Shown: piece after piece, positions 10,016 through 62,552 of the stretch
Position numbering within the stretch: the stretch's first letter is position 1
How the letters are laid out: each line of letters begins with the position of its first letter
Origin: Trichosphaerium sp. ATCC 40318
Lineage: Eukaryota; Protista; Tubulinea
Assembly: GCA_038496445.1 (NCBI GenBank)
Contig: JALMLS010000268.1
Span: 62,001-126,000, forward strand
Length of the DNA stretch: 64,000 bases
Reading direction: 5' to 3'
Position numbers and translations under genes: made by a program
The notes under the pieces: generated by a model
Seen by the model: only the letters and a program-made list of their open reading frames with translations
Database searches by the model: none
What the model was told of the DNA's origin: nothing

Positions 10016-10927
10016 CTAGCTGTTGCTATTTCTACTTACATACGTTATACCGAAAGACTCAATAGCTTCTTTTGTTATAAGGCTTGACCCTAGTATCTCC
10101 AAGTACTTCAATGATGTCATATGAGGGAAACAGTTATTCGTAATATTCCCAACGCCACAAAATACAAGTGATAGACTTTCAAGGTTTGTTAACTTCTTCA
10201 AACCATCATCTGTTATTTCTGTACACCTGGTGAGATGAAGACTTTTTACATTTATCAAGGATTTGATTCCTCTGTCTGTAATCAACACTCTTGTAAAAAT
10301 ATTATTACCTAACATAACTGTATGTACATTACAAAGGTGTTCAAGCCAAAAGTCTTTTGCATTATCATTCAAGCGTATTTTATGCACATCTTTGAGTTCC
10401 TTAATGCCTTCAACACTGATTTGCTTACAACTACAAAGACTTATCGTATGTACTCCTTTGAGTGCCTTCAATGAAACGTCTGTTATGGAAGTATTGGATA
10501 AGTTAATGTTGTAAACGGTGTGTGTTAGTCCTCCTTGTCCTTTTACAAGTGGAATGACATCTGCATCTGTAATTTTTGGATGTCTAAGAGCTATGGTGTT
10601 AACACCAAATAAATTCGCCAAATCAATTTGGGATACTGATGTTTTTACACTCAAACTAATTTTGGTGTTCTTCAGTAAGGGGCTGTCTTTTAGAACGATA
10701 CAATCTGATGATGACTTCAAATTGATATGATAGAATCCGATATTATGACGAATTATACTGTTGAAGGCGTGAGATACTGCTGAAGCTTTAATACGTTGTA
10801 TTCTGTTTAAATTACGCAACACGTGCGTTAATATCTCTGGAGGCAGTTCTTCACATTTTGAAATCATGTATGGATGGTCTCGAGTACGTTGCGATGCCAT
10901 TTGTATGTTTTTATCTTTGAGAGGCAT
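10016..10927 (-). CDS. Intronless F-box/leucine-rich repeat protein
   Basis: EELPPEILTHVLRNL..ASAVSHAF F-box followed by ITDxxLKxLxxVHTIxL-type LRRs; single 303-aa ORF; paralog of 61551-62552. Confidence 0.9.
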   Translation of the reverse strand: MPLKDKNIQMASQRTRDHPYMISKCEELPPEILTHVLRNLNRIQRIKASAVSHAFNSIIRHNIGFYHINLKSSSDCIVLKDSPLLKNTKISLSVKTSVSQIDLANLFGVNTIALRHPKITDADVIPLVKGQGGLTHTVYNINLSNTSITDVSLKALKGVHTISLCSCKQISVEGIKELKDVHKIRLNDNAKDFWLEHLCNVHTVMLGNNIFTRVLITDRGIKSLINVKSLHLTRCTEITDDGLKKLTNLESLSLVFCGVGNITNNCFPHMTSLKYLEILGSSLITKEAIESFGITYVSRNSNS

Positions 10928-11232
10928 AAGTCAACATATTTCGGGCAAAAGTGGCTCCAAATTGCGGGACTACTTGAAGTAGGTGTAACTCAAACACTAA
11001 ACAACGATTGTGACAAAACAGGGACATTGTAGTGACGAACTGTACGTAACTGCGCTCAAATTTTTGAGTTTCTGTCGTAGCGAGGAGGTGCTATCTACTT
11101 TGATCTCATATATCACGTGCGAGAAGTGTTTAGTACGCTTGATGTAGTTGACGTTACTCACTCACTATATGCATGATTAGATCAAGTAAGAATAACACAC
11201 TGACTAGCATTTTGTCAGACAAGTAAAGTCCA

Positions 11233-16956: not shown

Positions 16957-18415
16957 ATGGATAACCCGGATGGTGGTTTGAAACGCTTAGAGACTTTCCC
17001 TCACGAGATTCTTGTATTAATCTGCTACAACCTTGATGTGGAGCATATAATAGCGCTTGGAGCAACTTGCAAGGCATTTAATTTGTTTTCAGTTGATAAT
17101 AATTTGTGGTATTGCTTGTACGTCCAACACTTCAAATCAGAGCCTTCAGGTACCACTTTCTGCGTGTAAAAGAATTTTTAATTAAATGACAAGGAAACAA
17201 TATTAAGGCATCTTTTATTTACGATTGGACGCACAAGGTACTTGAGTTTAACTATTTGCCGTCAAACACAATTAACCGCTTTTGTGTTTAGCTGACTTTT
17301 CTCAAAATCGTTGAGTGAGTTCCTCCAAGACAGCAATAGCTTGTGTTCTAATATGTTATCCCAGGTCAAACACAGTATTAGAGAACCCAAATATTTCAAT
17401 ACGATACGATGACGCAGAGTTGGCTAATTTGGCAAACAATCCAGTACCTACCATCAATTAATAAGATTAAACAAGGACCTACCAGTAAGTTTAGGCAACG
17501 TGTTGTATTGGTGGAGAAACAGGAGTGGGATGTGTAAGTAAAAAAAACCACCTTAATGTTTTCCTCGTTTTTTCCAACTGTTATGTGCATGTGGTACCAT
17601 ATGTTAATCAGTTTTTTGGTATCAGACATCCATAGTTTCAAAGTATATAACTGAGTGGGTAAATGATGATTATACTCCAAAGTTCGGTATGTAATAATAT
17701 GAATGAAGATATTTTTTTAAATGTTGAACTTACATTCTTCAATTTAGAGCAAACAAACCTGCTTGTTTCGAAAAAACATCATGAGATTCTGCTGAAATTG
17801 TCTACAAATACTCTCGACATGTACAAGTTTTCTTGTGGTGTTTTTTTTTAACTAATGCTACCTGTAGTACTACTGACTTTGATTCTTTGTTTCCCATAGA
17901 ACGAAGCCAAATATTTGTACTTGTGTACTCTATATCTAGTAGACATAGTTTTGATCATGTTTCACTTTTTAGACAGACCGTTTTAGACATAAAACGGAGA
18001 GATACAGTTAGATTCATATTAGTATGAACAATGTATTTTCTTGTTTTTTTCTTATTCAGTGTAGGTTGCAAATAAATGCGATTTAAAAGATAGTAGAGAA
18101 GTGGATGATGATGAAGGGATGGCACTTGCAGAGTCATGGGGTGTACCTTTTCTAAAAGTGAGTTGTAAGACAGGGAAGAATATTCAACTTCTTTTTTATA
18201 ATATTGTTGATATTCATGAACACATGGTTGCAGAAAAAGAAAGGCGCAGGTACTATATTATTCAAGAAAGCCTTGTTTACAATGTGCTTTACCTCTTCTT
18301 CATTCTTTTTAAATATTTATTATGCCTGTGGCTCATTTATTGTGTTTACAGCATGGTACCTTTGATAAAAAAAATTGTAAAGGCAATATTTGGTACAAGC
18401 AACCAGTTAAAATAA
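16957..18415 (+). CDS. F-box + Ras-like small GTPase domain + C-terminal transmembrane segment (multi-exon)
   Basis: LETFPHEILVLICYNL..LGATCK (F-box); IGGETGVGC|TSIVSKY (G1-like), IFVLVYSISSRHSF, VANKCDL (G4), FLKVSCKTGKNI (G5); hydrophobic tail VLYLFFILFKYLLCLWLIYCVY. Confidence 0.75.
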
Positions 18416-18843
18416 GCAATAATTATATCCTGTAAGCTCATAATAAACTACGCTATTATCCTACAACTAAGGTCACGTCTCTCTTACACGAATTCTCATC
18501 TTTCGTGTGCCCTTAACGTTTCAGGATATGTGCTATTAATTCAATTGGAAGCGCAACAAGGTCAAATAACCGCCGATTTGGCAACTAAAAAAAGGCATTG
18601 ACCAAAATCAGAAGTTGTGGTTGTATAACGTCGTACATGAATAACAAGGTACATCACATTGAGAACTAGTGGTAACAAAGCGACAATATTGGATCCATCA
18701 TTCTCAATCCACTGAAAATTGAGAGGCGGTACAGTAAAAATTCTACCGTAAATCACCAACATTCTTGTAATTTTTTGAAGTTTTTGTGTATCCTGGCTTA
18801 ATTGAGCTAAGTTTTCGAAAACAAACCAGTCATATAGGGCCAC

Positions 18844-21800
18844 ATGGAGCTATGTATTAAGAATACTGGAGGTTTGAAGCAGTTTTATTGTTAGAAGTTA
18901 ACGAAGTATAGGTGGCGTTGAGAAATTAACTGTACAGCCAACTACTACTATTCGCGAAGTCATAAACGAACTTAAAATCGCCATTGATGCTGAACCAGGC
19001 ACAAAAATAACGATAATTAATTATGGTGCGCAAAATGGCTCAATGACTCGATTCAAGCGTTATACAATAACTAAACACTTCGTAAAACAGGAAAATTTGT
19101 GAAAGAATCAGATAAAACAATTGCAGAAGAGAACCTGCGCACTAGCCCTAACTTGTATTTTTTGGTATGTATCCTATCTTTTTTGGATAAGTTGGAGCTC
19201 TCTTTAACGTTCAGGATTAGGTTCAACCACCTTCTAACTTTAAAATTAATGTCGGAGTACGTACAAACACTATGTGTAAGCAATCGCTTTAACATCTTTT
19301 TGTTAAGACTCTCACTGGCAAGACTATCCCGTTAGATGTTAGAAGCACTGATACGGTAAGATCATAACAAGAGGTTTACTATCGGGCCAAGAACCTTACT
19401 TCTTTGACAAGGTATTGAGTGTAATGCATAAAATCCAAGACAGAGAAGGTGATATAATTATAGAAGTATCACGTGCTCACTCATATAGGGATTCCACCTG
19501 ATCAACAACGTCTTATTTGTGCTGGAAAAGCGCTCACTGGCATATTTAACAAGACAATTAAAGAAATAGCAGACTTAGGATCCCCTCAGATGCAATCATC
19601 CTCCAACACAGCTGCACCTAAGGAAGATATTATTGGAGGGATTTGGTGCCCTAACCGAACTTGGCTTGTGTACACAAATACGAAATTCATTTAGATTAAC
19701 AAAGACACTAACTTTTTTTTTTGAAGGGGTTCAACAATCGTTGGAATCGCTGTAGTGCGTACTTACGATCCTAAAACCGGATTGCTTGTACCACTTGAAG
19801 ATGAATCGGTAGCCATTGAATTTGTTCGAGTTGATGATGGGGCACTAGTTAGAGCACAGAAAGTTGCTGTAAAAGATGTTGCAATCTTTGAATTTCCAAT
19901 AAATCAAGTACGAATGAACCATCCATGTTGTTCTCGTAATATCTCACAATTGAGTAGTATGCTACACCAGGGGACCACTCTCTAATATTGAAACGTGGAG
20001 TTGAAGTGTTAGCACGTTTTGAACTCGAATGCAAGAGTTACCAGAAAAAGCCATTTATTGTAAGCTCTAAAAATCAACCACTCTTTCTTATTGTCTTCAA
20101 GGTCTCAGGGCTACCTTATGACAGTATATACATGAACGATAACATTCCTGATTCTTTATCATTAACACTAAGCTATCCTACTGGTGAGCCTATAAGCAAG
20201 GTACAGCAAACTGATTTGTGTTGTGAAAATGGCTAACTATACGGAACAGAGAGTTCAAGTTAGTCTTCGCTTGAAAGTTGCTGACGGAAACCCATACAAA
20301 ACCTCGGTAAACAGACTCAAGCCTAGCGATGAGGGAGTTATTTATCTACCACTGAGGAAAGCATCTGCGGATATGTCTATCGCAAAAGCACTGGGCATAT
20401 CCGAATGGGACATTAAAATCACTATTCCTGATTTGTATGTACAATTCAAGGCTTGTTATAACCTAATTGTTCGAGCTTTAGGGCGGAGCTTAAATTTAAT
20501 GGAAGATTTGTAGTAACTGATACACCTGTGATATTTACAGCGACTACTACAGCTCTCACCGACACTATAAAGGCACGCTCAACCAAAACCTTATAAAAAA
20601 CTTACAAGTTTCTACCATTCAGATTTCCGGTGTTGACGCTTTTGGTGTTCCTCTCCCTCCCGGCACACCTATATCTATAAGATTTCCAGATAATGATGCA
20701 AAGTTTGTAAACGAGAACTACAATATTCAAGACGATGGAAGCATAAACGTAGTATTGAAAGAAGGTGGCAGTGAACTTCCGTTTGCTTTCATCAACAAAA
20801 CAAAGGAATCAACTGATGACAGTGATGACGAAGGTTTTGGCGACTTTGGTGCCTTCTTAGATGAAGATTTAGGGCCTAAGCAAACCTTATCTGTTACGAT
20901 CAGTACCCTCAAAGGAGCGCTGGTTACTCAAACAATTGTTTTAGAGTGCGTCTTTGTAAAAGTGACGAAGTCATTCTTGTGTTGGTGCTGACGATCACGG
21001 TTTTCTTTAGAAACATTGTTGATGAAGCTTGTCAAGACAGTGTTATATCAATGTCTGTTACACCAAAAAAAGACGAATATCAAGTTGGAGAAGAGTTAGC
21101 TGTTGACGTTTCTTTGCTCTCAACAAAGGTACATAAAGCCATTGTTTTAAATGTCTTGTATTGCCTCTTATATATGTATCTAGGACGGAGAGCTCGTTAA
21201 AGAATCTCAAAATTGTATCATGGGGTTGTATTGTGGAGACAAAAAGATCTTGACCCGTTGCGAAGAATCAACAAATGGCAAAGCCACTTTTAACTTTAGC
21301 ATTCCTTCAGAATGCAACAAATCATGTACTCTCTCAATTATGGCGCCAAACGTGAGTATCAAAATAACTTAATATTCTAACGCTGTATAGTGTGTTATTG
21401 CTTCAGTTCCTATTCCCATCAATACTGAAAGTACTGGACAATTCTTTGGTGTTGACGTGTCAAGTGATAAATCAAATGATTGTTTTGCAACATCACAAAA
21501 GATAACTATTGTACAGTTTGTTAAAATACACAAATGTTAATGTGATTTAGAAATGTGGGTTAAAACATCCACTGAAGTCTGATGCTCGCGTTGTAGCGTT
21601 CCGGCGTGATGTTAGAATACCCAATGCAGTTCCTTCTAGCAATCTTAAAAAGGTGCAACTTTTTAATAACAATATTTGCTGACTCAATGCTTTTGTTAGA
21701 CGTTTGAACAAGCTGAAATGCTGCGGGAAAACGTCAGGATTACTTCTTGGATCAGTGAAGAATGCGTAGCTCTTCTTTATAGGCATAAAGGAGCTCCATT

Positions 21801-24800
21801 AGTAGCTATGGCGGTAGCAAAGCCTAATACGAGTTTCGATGCAGAATTTCTTCAGTACATGGCACACCTTGACACTAGCACACTAGATCCATTTTGTATC
21901 TATAGAACTATTGCTAAGACTAGGGTGAGTAAATACACTTTCATTTTTTAAGCACGTGCTCATTCGAAACTCCATAGAAAGCCAGATTTGTTTTTGTTAA
22001 CGCTTTGGAACTGGACGGTAATAACTTAAAAGTCAAAGGTCTTCATTACACTCCATTCTATGAATCAGGCCATATTAAGAAGCTAATGCCAGGTACAGTA
22101 CCGAAAATCACTCGAAAATATACTCATATAGCATAGAAGCATTGGTCAGTTGGTATAAAACGATTATGTCTCAGTACATTCTCACTACAAAAATGGCACG
22201 TGAACAGTCTTTGAAACTGATTCCAAGACTTACTTTTTTTTGTAGGACCTTGCCGATATGACTTTGAGTTCCCATGGAATTACTGATGGAAGCAAGCTTC
22301 ATTTAATACTTAGACTGCGTGGTGGAGGAGTAGTTGTTCCACAGGATCAGATCATTCGAAGCAAATTCATAGCTGTACGATTCAACGCAAAGTTATGACC
22401 CATTCTGATACTGTGATAGACGGATTATGTTACTTGTATAGGCAAGAAGGGATCTACTAATGTTGAACTCTGTTTTGATGGATCAGATGCAATTACACAA
22501 TATGACATTGACGTTTTTGTTTTTGATGGCGATCAAGTTGGTAAGTTTTGGCATCGTTGCTATTGAAGTTCTGTTGTTGACTTTTTACTATTTAGGTATT
22601 GGTTCTCATAAGATTACAGTTGCGAATCCTGTGTACTCATCTATTATAAACCCACCAACTATGAAACTTGGTACACTTGAGTGTTTACATTTTTGCCCAC
22701 TTTTTCTGTAAGCTAACTACATTCATAGGTGACAAGCTCAATATAAAGAGCATTGTTCGAAATAATTCTGATTCAAGCGTATCAAACGTTTCTGTGGCTC
22801 TATCCAATCTTAAAAATATTAAGTTGTGTGATAGTAAGTCGATTTCCTGGCACCAGAGCGAACTAACAAGCAATAGGTGGCATAACCCAAAAGCTAAAAA
22901 AATTAGAGGCAGGATCCTCTCATACATTCTACTGGCCTATTGAAGCCATCTCTACCGGTAGAGTAAACCTTACACATGACATGGTATGTCCTATTACAGA
23001 CAAAGCTAGAACTTCTGACAACTCTTTTTAAAGCGAGCTTCTGGAAGCGTTAAGTTACAAGAAACCATCACATCTTTAGATTCAGTTCTAGATGTTTCTC
23101 CTGTTGGTCAACCTCTCATTTCTAATGAGCGCAAATCACTTCACAAAGGTGGTACTTTTTCAACAAGTTTTCAAGTTGATGGTACAGAACAATGTGTGAT
23201 TACTACAGTATCAGTAGTAACAGGTAATACTTCATTGAAACACGTGCACTTTACTAAAAATAAAATTTCACATAGGTCAAATATCCGCAATTATGCATGC
23301 TCTTGGTGGGTTGATGGAGTATCCTCATGGGTGCTGTGAGCAATTAAATAGCTCTACATTACCAAATATAGTTCTTTACGAGTTCCTCCATGAACGTGAT
23401 CTTTTAAAAGCGACTCAAAAAGCCGAACTGATAAAGAACATGATTGCTGGTAAAAATCTTCTCATAAAGAAAAACTACAATACCGTAACAGGTGGATTTG
23501 GACTTTGGAGTCCAAAATCTACTTCAGTTTTTCATACAGCGCTAATTCTAGGTACTGGAATACATGGTACTGGTCATGTTCTAACAAGATCCTAGGTCTT
23601 TTCGGAAAGATGAACAAGTTTGTTTCAGTGCCAGACAAAATAATCAATGCGGCTTGTTCATACTTAGAAAAACATCAAAAGCAAGATGGTTCATTTGCTT
23701 GCTCAGGTAAGATGCCCAAATAACTATCTTATAGAATATTAAATTCTCTGTATAGCGGGCTCCTACACTCCATTCCCATCACTTCTTTCTGATGAAGCAA
23801 CTTCTATTTATGTCGCACAATCACTGGCACTTGCAGGGAAATTAAATGACAAACTTGTGTCGTGGATAGTATGTCTGTCAGCTTCAAGGGGTTTTAGTAT
23901 TTATACACTGCTAGGTTTCAAATGTGGAATCATATGTCTCAGATGTATCACTTGCAAGTATGGCGCTTGAAGCTTTGGCATGTGCAGGGCTTGTTCAGAA
24001 ATATAAGGATGTTGCAAATCAACTTCGTGATAGTATTGTGAGTAGCCACTGTGAAACAGGCGGTTGGGAATCTACAAGCGTAGCTTTAACACATGGTAAA
24101 GAATCTATAGAGACCACAGCATACGCCATAGTGGCTCTGAATAAGGTAAAAACAGATTTTCGTTTGAAATCGATTATTTGTTTGAGATTTAATTATATTC
24201 CTGTACTACTCTCGGAATCTATCTCAGAGCTTCTACTAGGCTTTTCCAGACAAATCTACTGCAGTCATTACAGATAAAGCAGTTGAGTTTATCATGTCTA
24301 AGCGTCAAAAGAACGGTAAAGAGACAACTTCAGAAGTACATTTTCTTATTTCATTTAAGGTTATGGTTCCACACGTGATACACTTTATGCTGTAATGGCT
24401 TTTGCAAGCATCAAAGATTTAGTCGCTTCTGAGAATGCGTCAGGCTCTCTTAAAGTCACTGTGAATGGTATTAAGAACATTGTGTTTATGAATGAGTAAC
24501 TTTACTTAATAGATAAGCTATTTAAGGAATTCAAACTTAACGATCTATCCAATGCTACTGATGTACTAGCACAATTGAAAGAAATTATCATACCGCCAGA
24601 GCACATTATAAACGTACGCTGTGGTCATCACCTAAGTATTTTTTAGTAATTTACATTAAAAGGGTACAAACAAAATTGATGTTGAAGCTTCAAAAACTTT
24701 TGGATGTCGTGTACTAGTTGAGAATCGTGTTTGGCCAAAATCAAACCTATTGGCAGCTAAGAGCTCAAACAGTATTGGAAGGTAATATATATTTTGTTTT

Positions 24801-25310
24801 TATAGTTCAACATTAACATGTGAACACAGTTTGTCGTATAATTTCTCCAAAAACAGCATTGCAACTGGTGAGCCTGTAGGCTTTAATGTAGATTTTGTGC
24901 CGAGTGAGACTACCACGCCACTTGAAGCCATTATGTTCGAAATACCACTTCCAAGGTACTGGTAAAAACATTGTAGATAGTTGTAGTCTAATATGTAAAT
25001 AAGCGGGTTCAGTTTGGAGGGTAGAGTCAAGACTGAAAATCCAGACATTTTAGATTATATCGAAGAAAAGAAAAACATGTCAGGAGAAACCAGGTACATA
25101 TTCTTGGTTGATGGCCCTTTCCTCATAATTTATAGGCTTTGTTGTCACGCATCACTCATTCAAAACATTGATAAAGTCTCGATCTCTGGTAAGATGAAAG
25201 CTTCATTCTCTGGCACAAATATTACTGTAAATCAATGTATTGCATACCCAATGTATGATGTCTCTCAAGGTGTATCTTCCCAAGAGCCAAGTACTTTGGT
25301 AGTATCATAA
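18844..25310 (+). CDS. Alpha-2-macroglobulin/thioester-containing protein (TEP) with ubiquitin-like domains, including an LRLRGG motif in the bait region (30 or more exons)
   Basis: N-terminal UBLs ([76 protein letters not shown]). MG-like segments (SYPTGEPI, KKDEYQVGEEL, IRSKF..SDAITQYDIDVF, PPTMKLGDKLNIKSIVRN). TED: YPHGCCEQ, GGFGLW, QKQDGSF, IETTAYA, GYGSTRDT. C-terminal MG8-like FEIPLPSGF..AYPMYD. Confidence 0.9.
22246..22326 (+). other. Exon segment encoding a ubiquitin C-terminal mimic (DLADMTLSSHGITDGSKLHLILRLRGG) in the A2M bait region
   Basis: Direct translation; compare ubiquitin [29 protein letters not shown] is at 22309-22326. Not present in the supplied ORF track. Confidence 0.9.
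23320..23343 (+). other. Thioester motif YPHGCCEQ
   Basis: C-x-E-Q with Cys at 23332 and Gln at 23341, in the context LMEYPHGCCEQLNSSTLPN. Confidence 0.92.
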
Positions 25311-25466
25311 TAAAATAAAACATTTGTTATGATGTCCATAGTTAAAGGGATATGTAACTTATTGGTTGCCCAGTTTAGTTAGTACACTGTAGTTTGATTC
25401 TATTTGTTGGCACTTTTATTGATTTCTTACAATGATATATGGTACAACAAGTATGACATTGCGATC

Positions 25467-25879
25467 TTAGCAACTTCCACAAGCAGCTTCGCTCCAGCAA
25501 CACCATTTGTCACTTCTGATGCGAAAGCATAATGGAGATCCAGGGTAGCAGTATGCAGTTGAACCTAATAAAGGTTAGTACAAAGAAGTCTGTTTCCAAC
25601 CTTTGATTTTTCACGTACATTGACCATTCTTTTCACGACCACGTTTACGCCATCCAGGAGGGCACCATCCATTTGTATCACATGTTTCACCACACAACAG
25701 TGGTCCTTGCTACATGAGGTGTTAATTAACAATACAATGTAAAGTAGCAAGTGTCGACATACCTCAGTTGATCTCTTTTCATGCATGTCTGGCATTTCTT
25801 CAGAGTCTTTAGATTGGGTCGTCAAGGCAATTGGTATCAAAGCCAAAGTCACCAATACAAATAATATTGTTGTGTTCAT
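25467..25879 (-). CDS. Secreted cysteine-rich prepropeptide, copy A (3 exons)
   Basis: MNTTILFVLVTLALIPIALTTQSKDSEEMPDMHEKRSTE|QGPLLCGETCDTNGWCPPGWRKRGREKNGQC|STAYCYPGSPLCFRIRSDKWCCWSEAACGSC*. Confidence 0.85.
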
Positions 25880-26208
25880 TTGTTTGTAGATGAGGTTTGT
25901 TGTTGGTTGAGGTTTAATAATTTTGTTTTGAATACTTAGACATCGATTTAAGTCTTCATATTCACTGAATAAAAGTATCATAAAATTGTTTACCATATTT
26001 CTTTTTCGCTAAATCCAACGCTTGTTATCCGTGTTCTCTTTATTATCATTACCGCTGTTCTATTTGGGGCTAAAATATTAGGTGATCTAAAAATTGCAAA
26101 GCTCCGATAAGAAGTTACCATAACTGCACATGAAGTGAGACTTAAATCATATTGACGTTCCAGTCATAAATACAAACTATAACAAGAACAACTACGCCTC
26201 ATAGAACA

Positions 26209-26624
26209 ATGCAAACAACAACTCTTTTCGCCTTTGTACTCATGGCATTGACTGTTGCCTTGGCGGTCCAATCTAATGAGCTCAGTGAAAGAGCCAAACG
26301 AGCAACTGAAGTAAGTCAAGATCTCCTCTTACATTTCCTTTTCTAACTTTCGTTTGTATTGTTAATTAACACCTCATGTAGCAAGGACCACTGTTGTGTG
26401 GTGAAACATGTGATACAAATGGATGGTGCCCTCCTGGATGGCGTAAACGTGGTCGTGAAAAGAATGGTCAATGTACGTGAAAAATCAAAGGTTGGAAACA
26501 GACTTCTTTGTACTAACCTTTATTAGGTTCAACTGCATACTGCTACCCTGGATCTCCATTATGCTTTCGCATCAGAAGTGACAAATGGTGTTGCTGGAGC
26601 GAAGCTGCTTGTGGAAGCTGCTAA
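26209..26624 (+). CDS. Secreted cysteine-rich prepropeptide, copy B (3 exons)
   Basis: MQTTTLFAFVLMALTVALAVQSNELSERAKRATE| followed by the same 10-Cys region as copy A; not in the ORF track. Confidence 0.85.
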
Positions 26625-27441
26625 GATCGCAATGTCATACTTGTTGTACCAATTAACGCTTTTTCTGTCATAAAACTGTTAATTAAAAACATCAAACATT
26701 TATCTCTCGTTGTTTTTGTTCCACTGACCATTTGAATTAAATCACTTACTAACTAAACCGTGTACCTTTTCTTGTTTCTGACCTTGGGGAAACGCTGTGA
26801 ATGTATTATTAAAAGGCACGTGATCAGTCGGGAAAAGTCCGAGAAAACGTACTTAACCTTGTAAATAAGTGAGCTTTCAGCGCCTTTCAAGCATGGCTAG
26901 GTTACACGACACGTTAACTACAATAAAGCGGTTTTACAAGTCAACATAGGATTTTCAATAGCAAATGTCATTGGATAAAAAAAAGTTGTTAAGATCCAAG
27001 CCGTTAATATAAACAATCACTAGCATCTAGCACAAGCGTAGTGTCATTTTTCGGCCTTAACCACAGTTGGCTGAGTCGCAATAAAATTGACTTTAGGATT
27101 TGTTTGAAGTTTGCAAGGTGAAAATCACGTGATACAAGGTAAGATATCGTACGTTGTTTGGTGAAATCCTACTGGAATATCAAACTTATCCTTCTTCAAC
27201 GGCTATCCAGTCTGAATACTCTAATGCCTCGTTTTGATGGTTATTTTCAGCCACTTAAAAGGACATTTAACATCTTAAACGTATGAAAGTGAAACTGACG
27301 ATAAAGCTAAATTGTACTTTTCGTTAGTATGTTGGCAAGTCTTAAGCAACAGAAATACACTTTGCTTTCCAAATTTATTTGCTTTATTAGGTTTTCAGGA
27401 CACTCAGTCGCTTGGGTCAAACTATACGAGCTATTGCCATT

Positions 27442-61315: not shown

Positions 61316-61550
61316 TAAAACCACATTTAATTTGTACTCACAAGTATTTCTCCAACAATGAGACCACTGCAGTACTTTGTTGAAACAAAGGACTAGTTTC
61401 AAGGTCACTAAAGACTATTACGCGGACTCTGTTATTTTGAGTGGAAGCATTGCTTGGTTGAATACAAGAATTCACGTGAACTTTTGTTTGGGTTTTATCT
61501 TCGCCAACTGAAATATTCTGACTTTTAGTTCAAACAATCCCGACATAGCG

Positions 61551-62552
61551 ATGTCATTAACAAGCGCAACAAACCCTCAAAATACGATTTCACATATTGA
61601 GGAGTTACCTACAGAGACATTAACGCATGTTTTGAGTTATTTGTACAGAAGACAACGTATTAGAGCTTCAACAGTATCTCACGCCTTCAACAACGTTATT
61701 CGTCATAACATTGGGTTTGATATTATTAAAATAAAGAAGCCACCAGAATGCTACGTTCTACGAGGCAGTCCATTACTTAGAAACACTGTTATTGATTGTT
61801 TTATGGTTTCAATGTCAAGAAGCGACTTGGCATGTCTTTACGGTGTTCACACCATACACCTTCAACATATAAGAAGACTCACAGATGCAGATGTTAAAGT
61901 GCTTCTAGAAGGAGAAGATGGATCAAAAAGCATGGTTCATCACATCTCCTTGGACCATACAGCTATAACAGATGTATCATTAAAAGCACTCAAAGGGGTA
62001 CATACAATAAGTATTTGCAGTTGTTCTGGTATTACTGTTGATGGAGTAAAGGAACTTAAAGATGTTCATGAAATTTTCTTAACTAATCCAAAAGACTCGT
62101 GGCTTAAACACCTTGGTAATGTCCATACTATAAATATGTTAGATTGCACTGAGAACACTACTGAAGAAGGTATCAAGGCTCTTAAAAATGTTAAGAAAAT
62201 TACTCTATGGCATCCAAAAGACTCATGGCTTAAGCACCTCTGTAATGTCCATACAGTTAAGATTTTACATGATTATAATCGTAGAAAGAAATATGTAACA
62301 GATGAAGGAATCAAGTCATTAACAAATGTTAAACTCCTAGTGCTTAGATGTTGTAATATTACAGACTCAAGTTTGAAGCACTTGGTTAATCTTGAGTACC
62401 TTGATCTTATCAGTTGTGATGTTATAACAAACGCATGTTTTAAGCACATGAAGTCACTCAAATCCATTTCAATACTTAGTTGCCCAAGATTAAATAAAAA
62501 GTATATAAAATCATTGGGCATAACTATTTATAAAGAAGGTAAGTTCCATTGA
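61551..62552 (+). CDS. Intronless F-box/leucine-rich repeat protein (paralog of 10016-10927)
   Basis: IEELPTETLTHVLSYL F-box; shares VSHAFNxxIRHNIGF and ITDVSLKALKGVHTIS with the paralog; internal 126-bp duplication (62088 vs 62214). Confidence 0.9.
   Translation: MSLTSATNPQNTISHIEELPTETLTHVLSYLYRRQRIRASTVSHAFNNVIRHNIGFDIIKIKKPPECYVLRGSPLLRNTVIDCFMVSMSRSDLACLYGVHTIHLQHIRRLTDADVKVLLEGEDGSKSMVHHISLDHTAITDVSLKALKGVHTISICSCSGITVDGVKELKDVHEIFLTNPKDSWLKHLGNVHTINMLDCTENTTEEGIKALKNVKKITLWHPKDSWLKHLCNVHTVKILHDYNRRKKYVTDEGIKSLTNVKLLVLRCCNITDSSLKHLVNLEYLDLISCDVITNACFKHMKSLKSISILSCPRLNKKYIKSLGITIYKEGKFH

What the first reader, a model, noticed from the sequence alone, without database searches (positions are those of the whole stretch)
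18844..25310. Alpha-2-macroglobulin with a ubiquitin C-terminus (LRLRGG) as its bait: candidate intracellular deubiquitinase trap
Seen: the gene encodes a full TEP/A2M architecture with an intact C-x-E-Q thioester. The bait region lies between the two halves of MG6 (first half ..DARVVAFRRD; second half IIRSKF..DAITQYDIDVF). That interval ends in DLADMTLSSHGITDGSKLHLILRLRGG, about 10 residues before R-x-x-F. The preceding ~60 aa (RFVFVNALELDGNNLKV..HIKKLMPEAL) may complete a divergent UBL. No signal peptide is visible; the protein begins with UBL domains. Established: A2Ms are activated when a protease cuts the bait, which exposes the thioester and traps the enzyme; DUBs cut after LRLRGG; the TEPs I know of are secreted or periplasmic. 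Inference: this is a cytosolic A2M re-baited for DUBs or Ubl proteases, e.g. effectors of intracellular bacteria or giant viruses. Alternatives: host DUB cleavage acts as a regulated activation switch, or cleavage exposes a GG end that is conjugated by E1/E2/E3. I know of no described example but could not search.
Basis: partly seen in the sequence, partly recalled or inferred. Interest (0 to 1): 0.95.

Follow-up and report, generated by a model that had tools for sequence, protein, structure and literature searches.

The report
Ubiquitin-tail bait in signal-less macroglobulin
An amoeba-type gene encodes a relative of the protease trap alpha-2-macroglobulin with no secretion signal, and its trigger loop ends in the cleavage tail of ubiquitin, so a ubiquitin-cutting enzyme may set it off; I found no description of this design, and its function is untested.

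Summary
Window 18844-25310 (+) is one expressed, intron-rich gene (my model: 37 exons, 1555 aa). It encodes a complete alpha-2-macroglobulin/thioester protein with an intact G-C-C-E-Q site. It has no signal peptide and starts with two ubiquitin-like modules.

Exon 21 (22246-22374) places a ubiquitin-derived segment (ubiquitin residues 55-76, 14/22 identical, ending LRLRGG) in the bait position. The tail ends 10 residues before the conserved R-x-x-F that restarts the split MG domain.

Three corrections:
- Only this C-terminal third resembles ubiquitin. The 40-61 residues before it show no significant similarity.
- No RNA contig covers this part of the gene.

The N-terminal module is ubiquitin 2-50 without its last strand, so the two ubiquitin-like pieces are complementary.

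The gene belongs to a clade of signal-less macroglobulins from Asgard archaea, cyanobacteria and the amoeba Difflugia. Two further members carry a whole HSP70 in the same bait position.

A cleavage-gated cytosolic thioester switch read by a ubiquitin-tail protease is the best reading. Whether that protease is foreign or the host's own is open. I found no published description. The scan had already noted other signal-less macroglobulin genes and decoy-like inserts elsewhere in this genome.

The parts
18844..25310 (+). Whole gene: 37 exons, 1555 aa, signal-less A2M/TEP-family protein
   Evidence: Spliced model. Twelve introns confirmed by RNA contigs. The C-terminal 453 aa equal P0007 with 4 substitutions. 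phmmer to P0006 gives E 1.8e-107.
18844..19164 (+). UBL1 (exons 1-3, aa 1-72): divergent ubiquitin-like module that starts at Met1 and has no Gly-Gly
   Evidence: Alignment to ubiquitin along nearly its whole length, Z 5.4. The splice sites here have no RNA support.
19242..19535 (+). UBL2 (aa 80-128): near-authentic ubiquitin residues 2-50; similarity stops abruptly after G-K-A-L
   Evidence: Score 156, Z 27.6. The part after it has Z 0.7 against ubiquitin 51-76. Introns 19356-19411 and 19449-19488 are confirmed by RNA.
19620..19669 (+). Start of the first MG domain inside the same exon as UBL2 (I-I-G-G-I-W-C-P-N), which shows the UBL-TEP fusion is real
   Evidence: Aligns to L-G-x-V-W-x-P of the Asgard and cyanobacterial relatives. 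An RNA contig is contiguous over 19517-19666.
20573..20622 (+). GC-AG intron
   Evidence: RNA contig record 2 follows the exon to 20572 and then leaves the genome. Only this junction restores the frame and the MG-domain spacing.
21551..21652 (+). Exon 17: first half of the split MG domain (motif D-A-R-V-V-A-F-R-R-D-V-R-I-P)
   Evidence: Aligned to the conserved D-x-R-I/V motif of relatives.
21700..21924 (+). Exon 18: 75-aa bait-region spacer with no detectable relatives
   Evidence: No Pfam hit. Not matched by the profile of the cyanobacterial insert. Coding score is best in the model frame.
21978..22199 (+). Exons 19 (21978-22097) and 20 (22137-22199), both phase 0-0: possible N-terminal part of a bait UBL; exon 20 is uncertain
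   Evidence: Open in frame. No significant similarity to ubiquitin. Exon 20 has a poor coding score. The alternative is a single 148-nt intron, 22098-22245.
22246..22374 (+). Exon 21: ubiquitin 55-76-like segment (22261-22326) ending LRLRGG (22309-22326), then G-V-V-V-P-Q-D-Q and the I-I-R-S-K-F start of the second MG half
23329..23343 (+). Thioester motif G-C-C-E-Q
   Evidence: Read directly from the sequence. Pfam TED on exon 27.
23276..24467 (+). Thioester domain (exons 27-32)
   Evidence: Pfam TED_complement on P0007, E 1.7e-14. All introns here are confirmed by RNA contigs or by P0007.
24513..25310 (+). C-terminal CUB/MG8-type region (exons 33-37)
   Evidence: Aligned as far as the bMG10 domain of P0006/P0008. 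Splicing is fixed by P0007.

Best explanation
This is a cytosolic member of the alpha-2-macroglobulin/thioester-protein family in which the usual disordered bait is replaced by a ubiquitin-derived tail.

Proposed mechanism:
1. In the resting protein the Cys-Gln thioester is buried.
2. A protease that recognises the ubiquitin C-terminus (LRLRGG) cuts after Gly832. That is 10 residues before the strand that restarts the split MG domain, the same place where bait cleavage fires A2M and convertase cleavage fires C3.
3. The cut releases the conformational change and exposes the thioester.
4. The thioester then bonds covalently to the protease or to whatever is nearby.

The most likely trigger is a foreign ubiquitin/UBL-tail protease, for example a deubiquitinase or ULP-type effector of an intracellular bacterium, or a Gly-Gly-specific protease of a giant virus. 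The protein would then be a tripwire and trap. The non-cleavable N-terminal UBL1 could route the product to the proteasome.

Shown: the architecture, the position of the tail, the intact thioester motif, the lack of a signal peptide, and expression. Inferred: cleavage, firing, trapping, and the identity of the protease.
For: - Position of the tail between the two conserved halves of the split MG domain.
- Intact G-C-C-E-Q and TED domain.
- The tail is preferentially conserved within the ubiquitin-like segment: 9/10 versus 5/12 identical, Fisher p 0.03.
- No signal peptide or membrane segment. The entire clade is signal-less, while macroglobulins outside it carry signal peptides.
- Relatives P0017 and P0098 carry a complete HSP70 in the same place, directly before R-x-x-F-P-E. 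Cyanobacterial relatives carry a folded insert followed by a disordered stretch there. The bait position is therefore a recurrent site for displaying folded or host-like modules.
- The gene is transcribed and spliced.
- Replacing part of the bait of monomeric E. coli A2M with a chosen cleavage site re-targets covalent capture (PMC9918453).
- Unchecked scan notes report decoy-like inserts of histones, actin and Ras in another bacterial-type scaffold of this genome.
Against: - There are no biochemical data.
- Most deubiquitinases need the ubiquitin body (the Ile44 patch). Here the residues before the tail are not recognisably ubiquitin, so only tail-reading proteases would fit.
- The host's own deubiquitinases would meet the same LRLRGG.
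- No orthologue covering the bait could be found, so conservation is untested.
- No RNA covers exons 14-22 and exon 20 is uncertain.
- PADLOC lists no relatives as defence genes, and the prokaryotic relatives have no telling neighbours.
Confidence: 0.4

Rival explanations
1. Housekeeping maturation. The amoeba's own deubiquitinases cut after LRLRGG during or soon after synthesis. This makes a two-chain protein (UBL1-UBL2-MG1-6a-UBL tail, plus MG6b-TED-MG8). It would be the cytosolic equivalent of furin processing of C3/C4 or of the cut form of insect TEP1. Activation of the thioester then depends on something else.
For: - The tail is a perfect ubiquitin C-terminus followed by Gly, a permitted residue.
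- Linear ubiquitin fusions are cleaved by cellular deubiquitinases (established knowledge).
- Unchecked scan notes report other genes of this genome that seem to use diverged UBL-Gly-Gly modules as processing sites.
Against: - In characterised A2M-type proteins a cut at this position is the activating event, so constitutive cutting would spend the thioester.
- The ubiquitin body is not conserved, which argues against efficient recognition by general deubiquitinases.
Confidence: 0.3
2. Not a cleavage site. The ubiquitin-like pieces are docking or structural modules: a plug like the anaphylatoxin domain of C3, or handles for proteasome, p97 or autophagy receptors. The LRLRGG tail is a leftover of a fairly recent capture of ubiquitin sequence.
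For: - UBL1 has no Gly-Gly, and UBL domains commonly act as proteasome handles (established knowledge).
- Domain insertions at the bait position occur in relatives without any obvious cleavage logic: HSP70, CarboxypepD_reg.
Against: Docking UBLs normally lose the LRLRGG tail. Here the tail is the best-kept part, and it lies exactly at the activating position.
Confidence: 0.18
3. Annotation artefact or decaying gene. The ubiquitin-like exon is not part of the mature mRNA, or the locus is a pseudogene.
For: No RNA contig covers 20700-22500. Splice-site scores around exons 19-21 are mediocre. Exon 20 has a poor coding score.
Against: - Exon 21 also encodes the conserved I-I-R-S-K-F strand that relatives require, so it cannot be skipped without breaking the fold.
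- The frame is open through all 37 exons.
- Both ends of the gene are transcribed and spliced.
- A near-identical transcript exists in an independent sample.
Confidence: 0.05

Closest known systems
Signal-less A2M clade of Asgard archaea and filamentous cyanobacteria (e.g. P0008 Hodarchaeales, P0004 Promethearchaeota, P0006/P0082 cyanobacteria), plus the Difflugia fragment P0001
   Same: True sequence family. phmmer E-values are 1e-82 to 1e-114, and the clade has 100% SH-aLRT support. These proteins share the G-C-C-E-Q-type thioester, the same split MG domain with R-x-x-F restart, a bMG10-type C-terminus, and the lack of a signal peptide.
   Different: Their bait regions are Gly/Pro/Arg/Met-rich and disordered, or (in cyanobacteria) hold a ~130-aa insert of unmatched fold. 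None has ubiquitin-like sequence. Their N-terminal ~80 aa are replaced here by UBL1-UBL2.
HSP70-in-bait macroglobulins P0017 and P0098 (metatranscriptome/Logan, organism unknown)
   Same: Same clade. A folded, highly conserved cellular protein is inserted at exactly the bait position, just before R-x-x-F-P-E.
   Different: The insert is an HSP70 (Pfam positions 1-521 of 599), not ubiquitin. P0017 has an N-terminal hydrophobic signal-like segment.
Complement C3/C4/C5 (anaphylatoxin domain)
   Same: A small folded domain sits in the same interruption of MG6. A specific protease cuts at its C-terminal end, a short distance before the R-x-x-F-P-E-x-W strand, and this exposes the thioester (established knowledge).
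   Different: The fold is different (anaphylatoxin versus ubiquitin-derived). C3/C4/C5 are secreted, disulfide-linked and furin-processed, and belong to a different branch of the family. This protein is not a member of that branch.
Bacterial monomeric A2M (E. coli ECAM/YfhM) and its engineered form A2Mcap
   Same: Monomeric MG-bait-TED trap. Replacing part of the bait with a chosen cleavage site re-targets covalent capture (PMC9918453).
   Different: A periplasmic lipoprotein with a signal peptide and a short unstructured bait.
Linear ubiquitin fusions (polyubiquitin, ubiquitin-ribosomal protein fusions)
   Same: LRLRGG is followed directly by another polypeptide. PDB hits to exon 21 include such fusions.
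   Different: Those carry a complete, nearly invariant ubiquitin. Here only residues 55-76 are recognisable at the bait, and residues 2-50 sit about 700 residues upstream.
Protease tripwires and integrated decoys (NLRP1, CARD8, plant NLR decoys)
   Same: Functional analogy only, from my own knowledge: a host sensor displays a mimic of a pathogen target, and cleavage or modification of the mimic fires it.
   Different: No homology. The output here would be a covalent thioester bond rather than inflammasome assembly.

Membership tests
Alpha-2-macroglobulin / thioester-containing protein superfamily | Thioester domain with C-x-E-Q motif | tested here: met
   G-C-C-E-Q at 23329-23343. Pfam TED_complement gives E 1.6e-8 on exon 27 and 1.7e-14 on P0007.
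Alpha-2-macroglobulin / thioester-containing protein superfamily | Array of N-terminal MG domains | tested here: met
   Model aa 156-432 and 514-675 align to P0006 residues 80-357 and 405-567, which carry Pfam MG2 and MG4. No Pfam hit on single exons.
Alpha-2-macroglobulin / thioester-containing protein superfamily | MG domain split by a bait region, restarting with R-x-x-F and D-x-I-T-x-W/Y (Pfam A2M) | tested here: met
   Alignment. Model aa 834-1540 align to P0006 790-1479, E 3.4e-97, covering its Pfam A2M domain at 809-887.
Alpha-2-macroglobulin / thioester-containing protein superfamily | C-terminal MG8 / receptor-binding-type domain | tested here: met
   The alignment runs to the bMG10 domain of P0006/P0008.
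Alpha-2-macroglobulin / thioester-containing protein superfamily | Bait cleavage triggers a conformational change and thioester exposure | not testable with these tools
   Needs biochemistry.
Classical secreted or periplasmic TEPs (A2M, C3, ECAM) | N-terminal signal peptide or lipobox | tested here: not met
   The highest hydropathy in the first 60 aa is 1.07, and no segment reaches membrane-helix level. The model starts with a UBL at Met1. An upstream exon cannot be excluded, because there is no RNA at the 5' end.
Complement C3/C4/C5 subfamily | Anaphylatoxin domain in the bait position | tested here: not met
   No Pfam hit on exons 18-19 and only ubiquitin-type hits on exon 21; exon 20 was not scanned.
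Ubiquitin family (Pfam PF00240), bait module | Complete beta-grasp domain recognisable over its length | tested here: inconclusive
   Only profile positions 51-72/72 match (E 0.005, below the cut-off). The N-part has Z 0.4-0.8. No structure prediction was possible, because a spliced protein has no reference in these tools.
Ubiquitin family (Pfam PF00240), bait module | C-terminal L-R-L-R-G-G tail | tested here: met
   22309-22326.
Ubiquitin family, N-terminal UBL2 | Complete beta-grasp including the last strand | tested here: not met
   Ubiquitin 2-50 is present (Z 27.6). The following 30 residues are unrelated (Z 0.7) and run straight into the first MG strand.
Known anti-phage defence systems (PADLOC) | Match to a listed defence protein model | tested here: not met
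   No hit for P0004, P0006, P0007 or P0008.

The most novel reading that the evidence does not exclude
A natural split ubiquitin. The N-terminal module holds ubiquitin residues 2-50 but lacks the last strand. The bait holds ubiquitin residues 55-76, with that strand and the tail. The two pieces are complementary and do not overlap, and similarity stops abruptly at both inner edges. In the resting protein they could assemble in cis into one ubiquitin fold that clamps the N-terminus onto the bait. A deubiquitinase would then see a substrate only in that assembled state, and cutting or unclamping it would fire the thioester. Combined with HSP70 in the bait of relatives, this would define a protist and Asgard-related family of cytosolic covalent sensors that display core host proteins.
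Probability: 0.12. Interest if true: 0.9.

Novelty: new variant of a known kind. Interest (0 to 1): 0.78.

Why it matters
Thioester proteins (A2M, complement C3, insect TEPs) are treated as extracellular or periplasmic innate-immune molecules. This gene, and the clade around it, point to a cytosolic branch present in Asgard archaea, cyanobacteria and amoebae. In that branch the trigger loop can carry pieces of central cell proteins: ubiquitin here, HSP70 in relatives.

If the ubiquitin tail is a cleavage trigger, this would be a covalent tripwire for ubiquitin-directed proteases. Such enzymes are common among effectors of amoeba-resisting bacteria and in large DNA viruses. It would also be a natural counterpart of engineered bait-swapped macroglobulins.

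The hypothesis is directly testable with recombinant protein. The clade also bears on the origin of complement-like immunity.

Tried and rejected
No GT-AG (or GC-AG) path joins it to exon 21 except an 8-nt exon (reasoned).
- The first automatic splice models removed the thioester or mis-framed several exons. I replaced them with RNA- and homology-guided curation.
- The Gly-Gly at aa 162-163 is not a second ubiquitin tail. It aligns to the first MG strand of relatives.
- The cyanobacterial bait insert is not homologous to exons 18-20 by profile search. Its predicted fold (pLDDT 84) matches nothing in the PDB by Foldseek and is not obviously a beta-grasp.
- A search for transcripts or orthologues of the bait exon in JGI metagenome and metatranscriptome contigs found only an unrelated ciliate-like UBL gene, L002.
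- Three word-indexed protein searches found no full-length eukaryotic relative and no protein combining ubiquitin with TED.
- The ESM Atlas look-up of exon 19 gave only low-recognition TPR noise.
- PADLOC gave nothing, and the gene neighbourhoods of prokaryotic relatives were uninformative.
- Six literature searches found no description.
- Structure prediction of the bait module or the whole protein was not done.
Full report
GENE MODEL. The window is eukaryotic, about 36% G+C. In this gene the introns are 39-94 nt long, mostly GTA...AG, often with a CTAAC-like branch site. Two automatic splice models were unreliable, so I curated the gene by hand from the sequence, RNA contigs and homologues. 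The final model has 37 exons from ATG 18844 to the stop at 25310 and encodes 1555 aa.

RNA EVIDENCE. Contigs of two public runs laid on 18700-24699 show twelve GT-AG joints that match the model:
- 19356-19411 and 19449-19488
- 20435-20481
- 22671-22728 and 22834-22876
- 23224-23275, 23552-23595, 23707-23755 and 23869-23914
- 24316-24359, 24468-24512 and 24614-24662

One contig follows an exon to 20572 and then leaves the genome. This fits a GC-AG intron at 20573-20622, the only junction that restores the frame.

A 453-aa protein from a JGI metatranscriptome contig (P0007) equals the C-terminal 453 aa of the model, with the same length and 4 substitutions. That fixes the last eleven exons. No RNA contig covers 20700-22500 or the 5' end.

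ARCHITECTURE. An exhaustive HMMER search with the thioester exon found only 66 proteins at E <= 1e-3. With the spliced model, phmmer gives E 1e-82 to 1e-114 against the best of them. Model aa 156-432 and 514-675 align to the N-terminal MG region of P0006. Model aa 834-1540 align to P0006 residues 790-1479. Pfam places MG2, MG4, A2M, TED_complement and bMG10 on those relatives, and TED on our own exon 27 and on P0007. The thioester motif G-C-C-E-Q is intact at 23329-23343. This is a complete A2M/TEP-type protein.

BAIT REGION. In a MAFFT alignment with eleven full-length relatives, exon 17 carries the conserved first-half motif (D-A-R-V-V-A-F-R-R-D-V-R-I-P). Exon 21 carries the restart (I-I-R-S-K-F, followed in exon 22 by D-A-I-T-Q-Y). 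Everything between, aa 670-832, is specific to this gene:
- a 75-aa spacer (exon 18);
- exons 19-20;
- the first 27 residues of exon 21, which end in LRLRGG (22309-22326).

Ten residues (G-V-V-V-P-Q-D-Q-I-I) separate Gly832 from Arg843. Exons 18-21 are all phase 0-0.

Two solutions remain: a 63-nt exon 20 between 39- and 46-nt introns, which are typical sizes here, or one 148-nt intron, which would be the longest in the gene. Exon 20 has a poor codon score. Both solutions keep the tail in frame.

HOW UBIQUITIN-LIKE ARE THE MODULES?
- Exon 21 matches ubiquitin residues 55-76 with 14/22 identities (Z 12.8; Pfam E 0.005 for profile positions 51-72; PDB ubiquitins). Within it the last ten residues differ from ubiquitin at one position and the preceding twelve at seven (Fisher p 0.03).
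- The 61-66 residues before it have no significant similarity to ubiquitin (Z 0.4-0.8). A complete bait UBL is therefore possible from the hydrophobic pattern but not shown.
- UBL1 (aa 1-72) at the N-terminus is a divergent full-length UBL without Gly-Gly (Z 5.4).
- UBL2 is ubiquitin 2-50 at about 70% identity (Z 27.6). Similarity then ends abruptly. The next 30 residues are unrelated (Z 0.7) and run into the first MG strand, which is encoded in the same exon and aligns to L-G-x-V-W-x-P of relatives.

Two consequences follow. The UBL-TEP fusion is real. And the two ubiquitin-like pieces of the protein (2-50 and 55-76) are complementary. This confirms and extends the scan's separate note on the N-terminal half.

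LOCALISATION. The model has no hydrophobic N-terminus and no membrane-helix-like segment. Met1 aligns with Met1 of ubiquitin.

The relatives show the same pattern. Eighteen of 19 clade members from Asgard archaea, cyanobacteria or unnamed metagenome sources have no hydrophobic segment in their first 45 residues (maximum hydropathy 1.3 or less; the exception, P0013, reaches 1.8). Thirteen of 15 macroglobulins outside the clade have a classical signal-like segment (2.0-3.4). A cytosolic location is thus a property of the clade, not of this gene alone.

RELATIVES. Source names place the relatives in three groups:
- Asgard archaea: Hodarchaeales, Promethearchaeota, Hermod-, Thor- and Freyarchaeota;
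- filamentous cyanobacteria: Hormoscilla, Argonema, Xenococcaceae;
- the testate amoeba Difflugia (EukProt fragment P0001, 43% identity).

A quick maximum-likelihood tree of the post-bait region gives a 100%-supported clade with three branches:
- Hodarchaeales and Thorarchaeota with P0017/P0098;
- other Asgard with unnamed sequences;
- this gene plus Difflugia, together with the cyanobacteria.

P0017 and P0098 (2063 and 2070 aa) carry an HSP70 (Pfam positions 1-521 of 599; residues 808-1327 of P0017) directly before R-x-x-F-P-E, that is, in the bait position. Cyanobacterial members carry a conserved ~130-aa insert there. AlphaFold2 gives it pLDDT 84, Foldseek finds no PDB match, and a disordered Met/Arg/Gly-rich then acidic stretch follows it. 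More distant bacterial members have a CarboxypepD_reg domain between the bait-region domain and the A2M domain. The bait position is a recurrent insertion site in this family.

MECHANISM AND RIVALS. Established knowledge:
- cleavage in the bait of A2M, or at the C-terminal end of the anaphylatoxin domain of C3, releases a conformational change that exposes the thioester;
- ubiquitin-specific proteases cut after LRLRGG;
- in monomeric E. coli A2M, replacing part of the bait with a chosen cleavage site re-targets covalent capture (PMC9918453).

From the anatomy, the most economical reading is a cleavage-gated thioester switch whose trigger is a protease that reads the ubiquitin tail.

I rate a foreign trigger (effector deubiquitinase or ULP, or a viral Gly-Gly protease) as somewhat more likely than the host's own enzymes, for three reasons. 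A cut here is normally the activating event. The ubiquitin body that general deubiquitinases grip is not conserved while the tail is. And relatives display other core host proteins.

The maturation rival is serious. The tail is a perfect substrate motif, and unchecked scan notes suggest this amoeba uses UBL-Gly-Gly modules as processing sites elsewhere. A non-cleaved docking or plug role and an annotation artefact are less likely, for the reasons given under each rival. The complementary ubiquitin halves allow a more unusual split-ubiquitin clamp, which I could not test.

LITERATURE AND DATABASES. Six full-text searches found no paper that combines thioester proteins or macroglobulins with a ubiquitin bait, deubiquitinases, Asgard archaea or amoebae in this sense. 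PADLOC has no model for the clade. The neighbourhoods of the Hodarchaeales and cyanobacterial genes show no conserved partner.

LIMITS.
- Conservation of the tail could not be tested. Public collections hold only C-terminal fragments of close relatives, and a scan of JGI contigs for the bait exon found only an unrelated UBL gene.
- The spliced protein could not be folded, because it has no reference in these tools.
The 'amoeba' label rests on the Difflugia relative and on earlier scan notes.

Noticed in passing
P0017 and P0098 (proteins; HSP70 at residues 808-1327 of P0017): Two ~2060-aa macroglobulin-family proteins from metatranscriptome/Logan contigs carry an HSP70 in the bait position, directly before R-x-x-F-P-E. 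P0017 also has a signal-like N-terminus, and its source names it 'heat shock protein 5' (BiP).
   Followed up: partly
P0004, P0005, P0008, P0043, P0068, P0096, P0097, P0110 (Asgard) and P0006, P0067, P0070-P0093 (cyanobacteria): A well-supported clade of macroglobulin/thioester proteins without signal peptides in Asgard archaea and filamentous cyanobacteria. It has no PADLOC model and no conserved gene neighbours, and I found no description of it.
   Followed up: partly
P0006 residues 564-712 and homologues (alignment A1, model me8f8569beb1c): Cyanobacterial members have a conserved ~130-aa alpha/beta insert in the bait region. It is confidently predicted (pLDDT 84) and has no Foldseek match in the PDB.
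   Followed up: partly
window 20573-20622: A GC-AG intron in this gene. It is implied by an RNA contig that leaves the genome at 20572 and by the reading frame.
   Followed up: yes
window 17785-18412 (+): A Ras-family small GTPase gene lies directly upstream on the same strand (Pfam Ras, E 1.9e-9). Another scan note reports a cpRAS-VWA gene next to a signal-less macroglobulin gene elsewhere in this genome.
   Followed up: partly
window 25440-25745 and 26346-26651: A 306-nt inverted repeat, 99% complementary, 600 nt apart, just downstream of the gene. Each arm carries the 3' part of a small Cys-rich, apparently secreted peptide gene (ORFs 25565-25996 on the minus strand and 26209-26526 on the plus strand).
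   Followed up: partly
window 10019-10930 (-) and 61512-62549 (+): Two paralogous intron-poor F-box plus leucine-rich-repeat genes with very similar N-termini.
   Followed up: no
window 19297-19327 and 19487-19529: Highly expressed contigs of genuine ubiquitin mRNA from run X1 lay on short stretches of the UBL2 exons at 90% identity or more, then diverge (loose ends read Q-L-E-D-G-R and K-I-Q-D-K-E). The depth seen there is therefore not expression of this gene.
   Followed up: yes
L002 3100-3741: A 27% G+C metagenome contig encodes an unrelated protein with a C-terminal near-ubiquitin ending K-L-H-L-I-L-R-L-R-G-G, followed by further residues. It has the same Val-to-Ile change as the bait tail here.
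   Followed up: no
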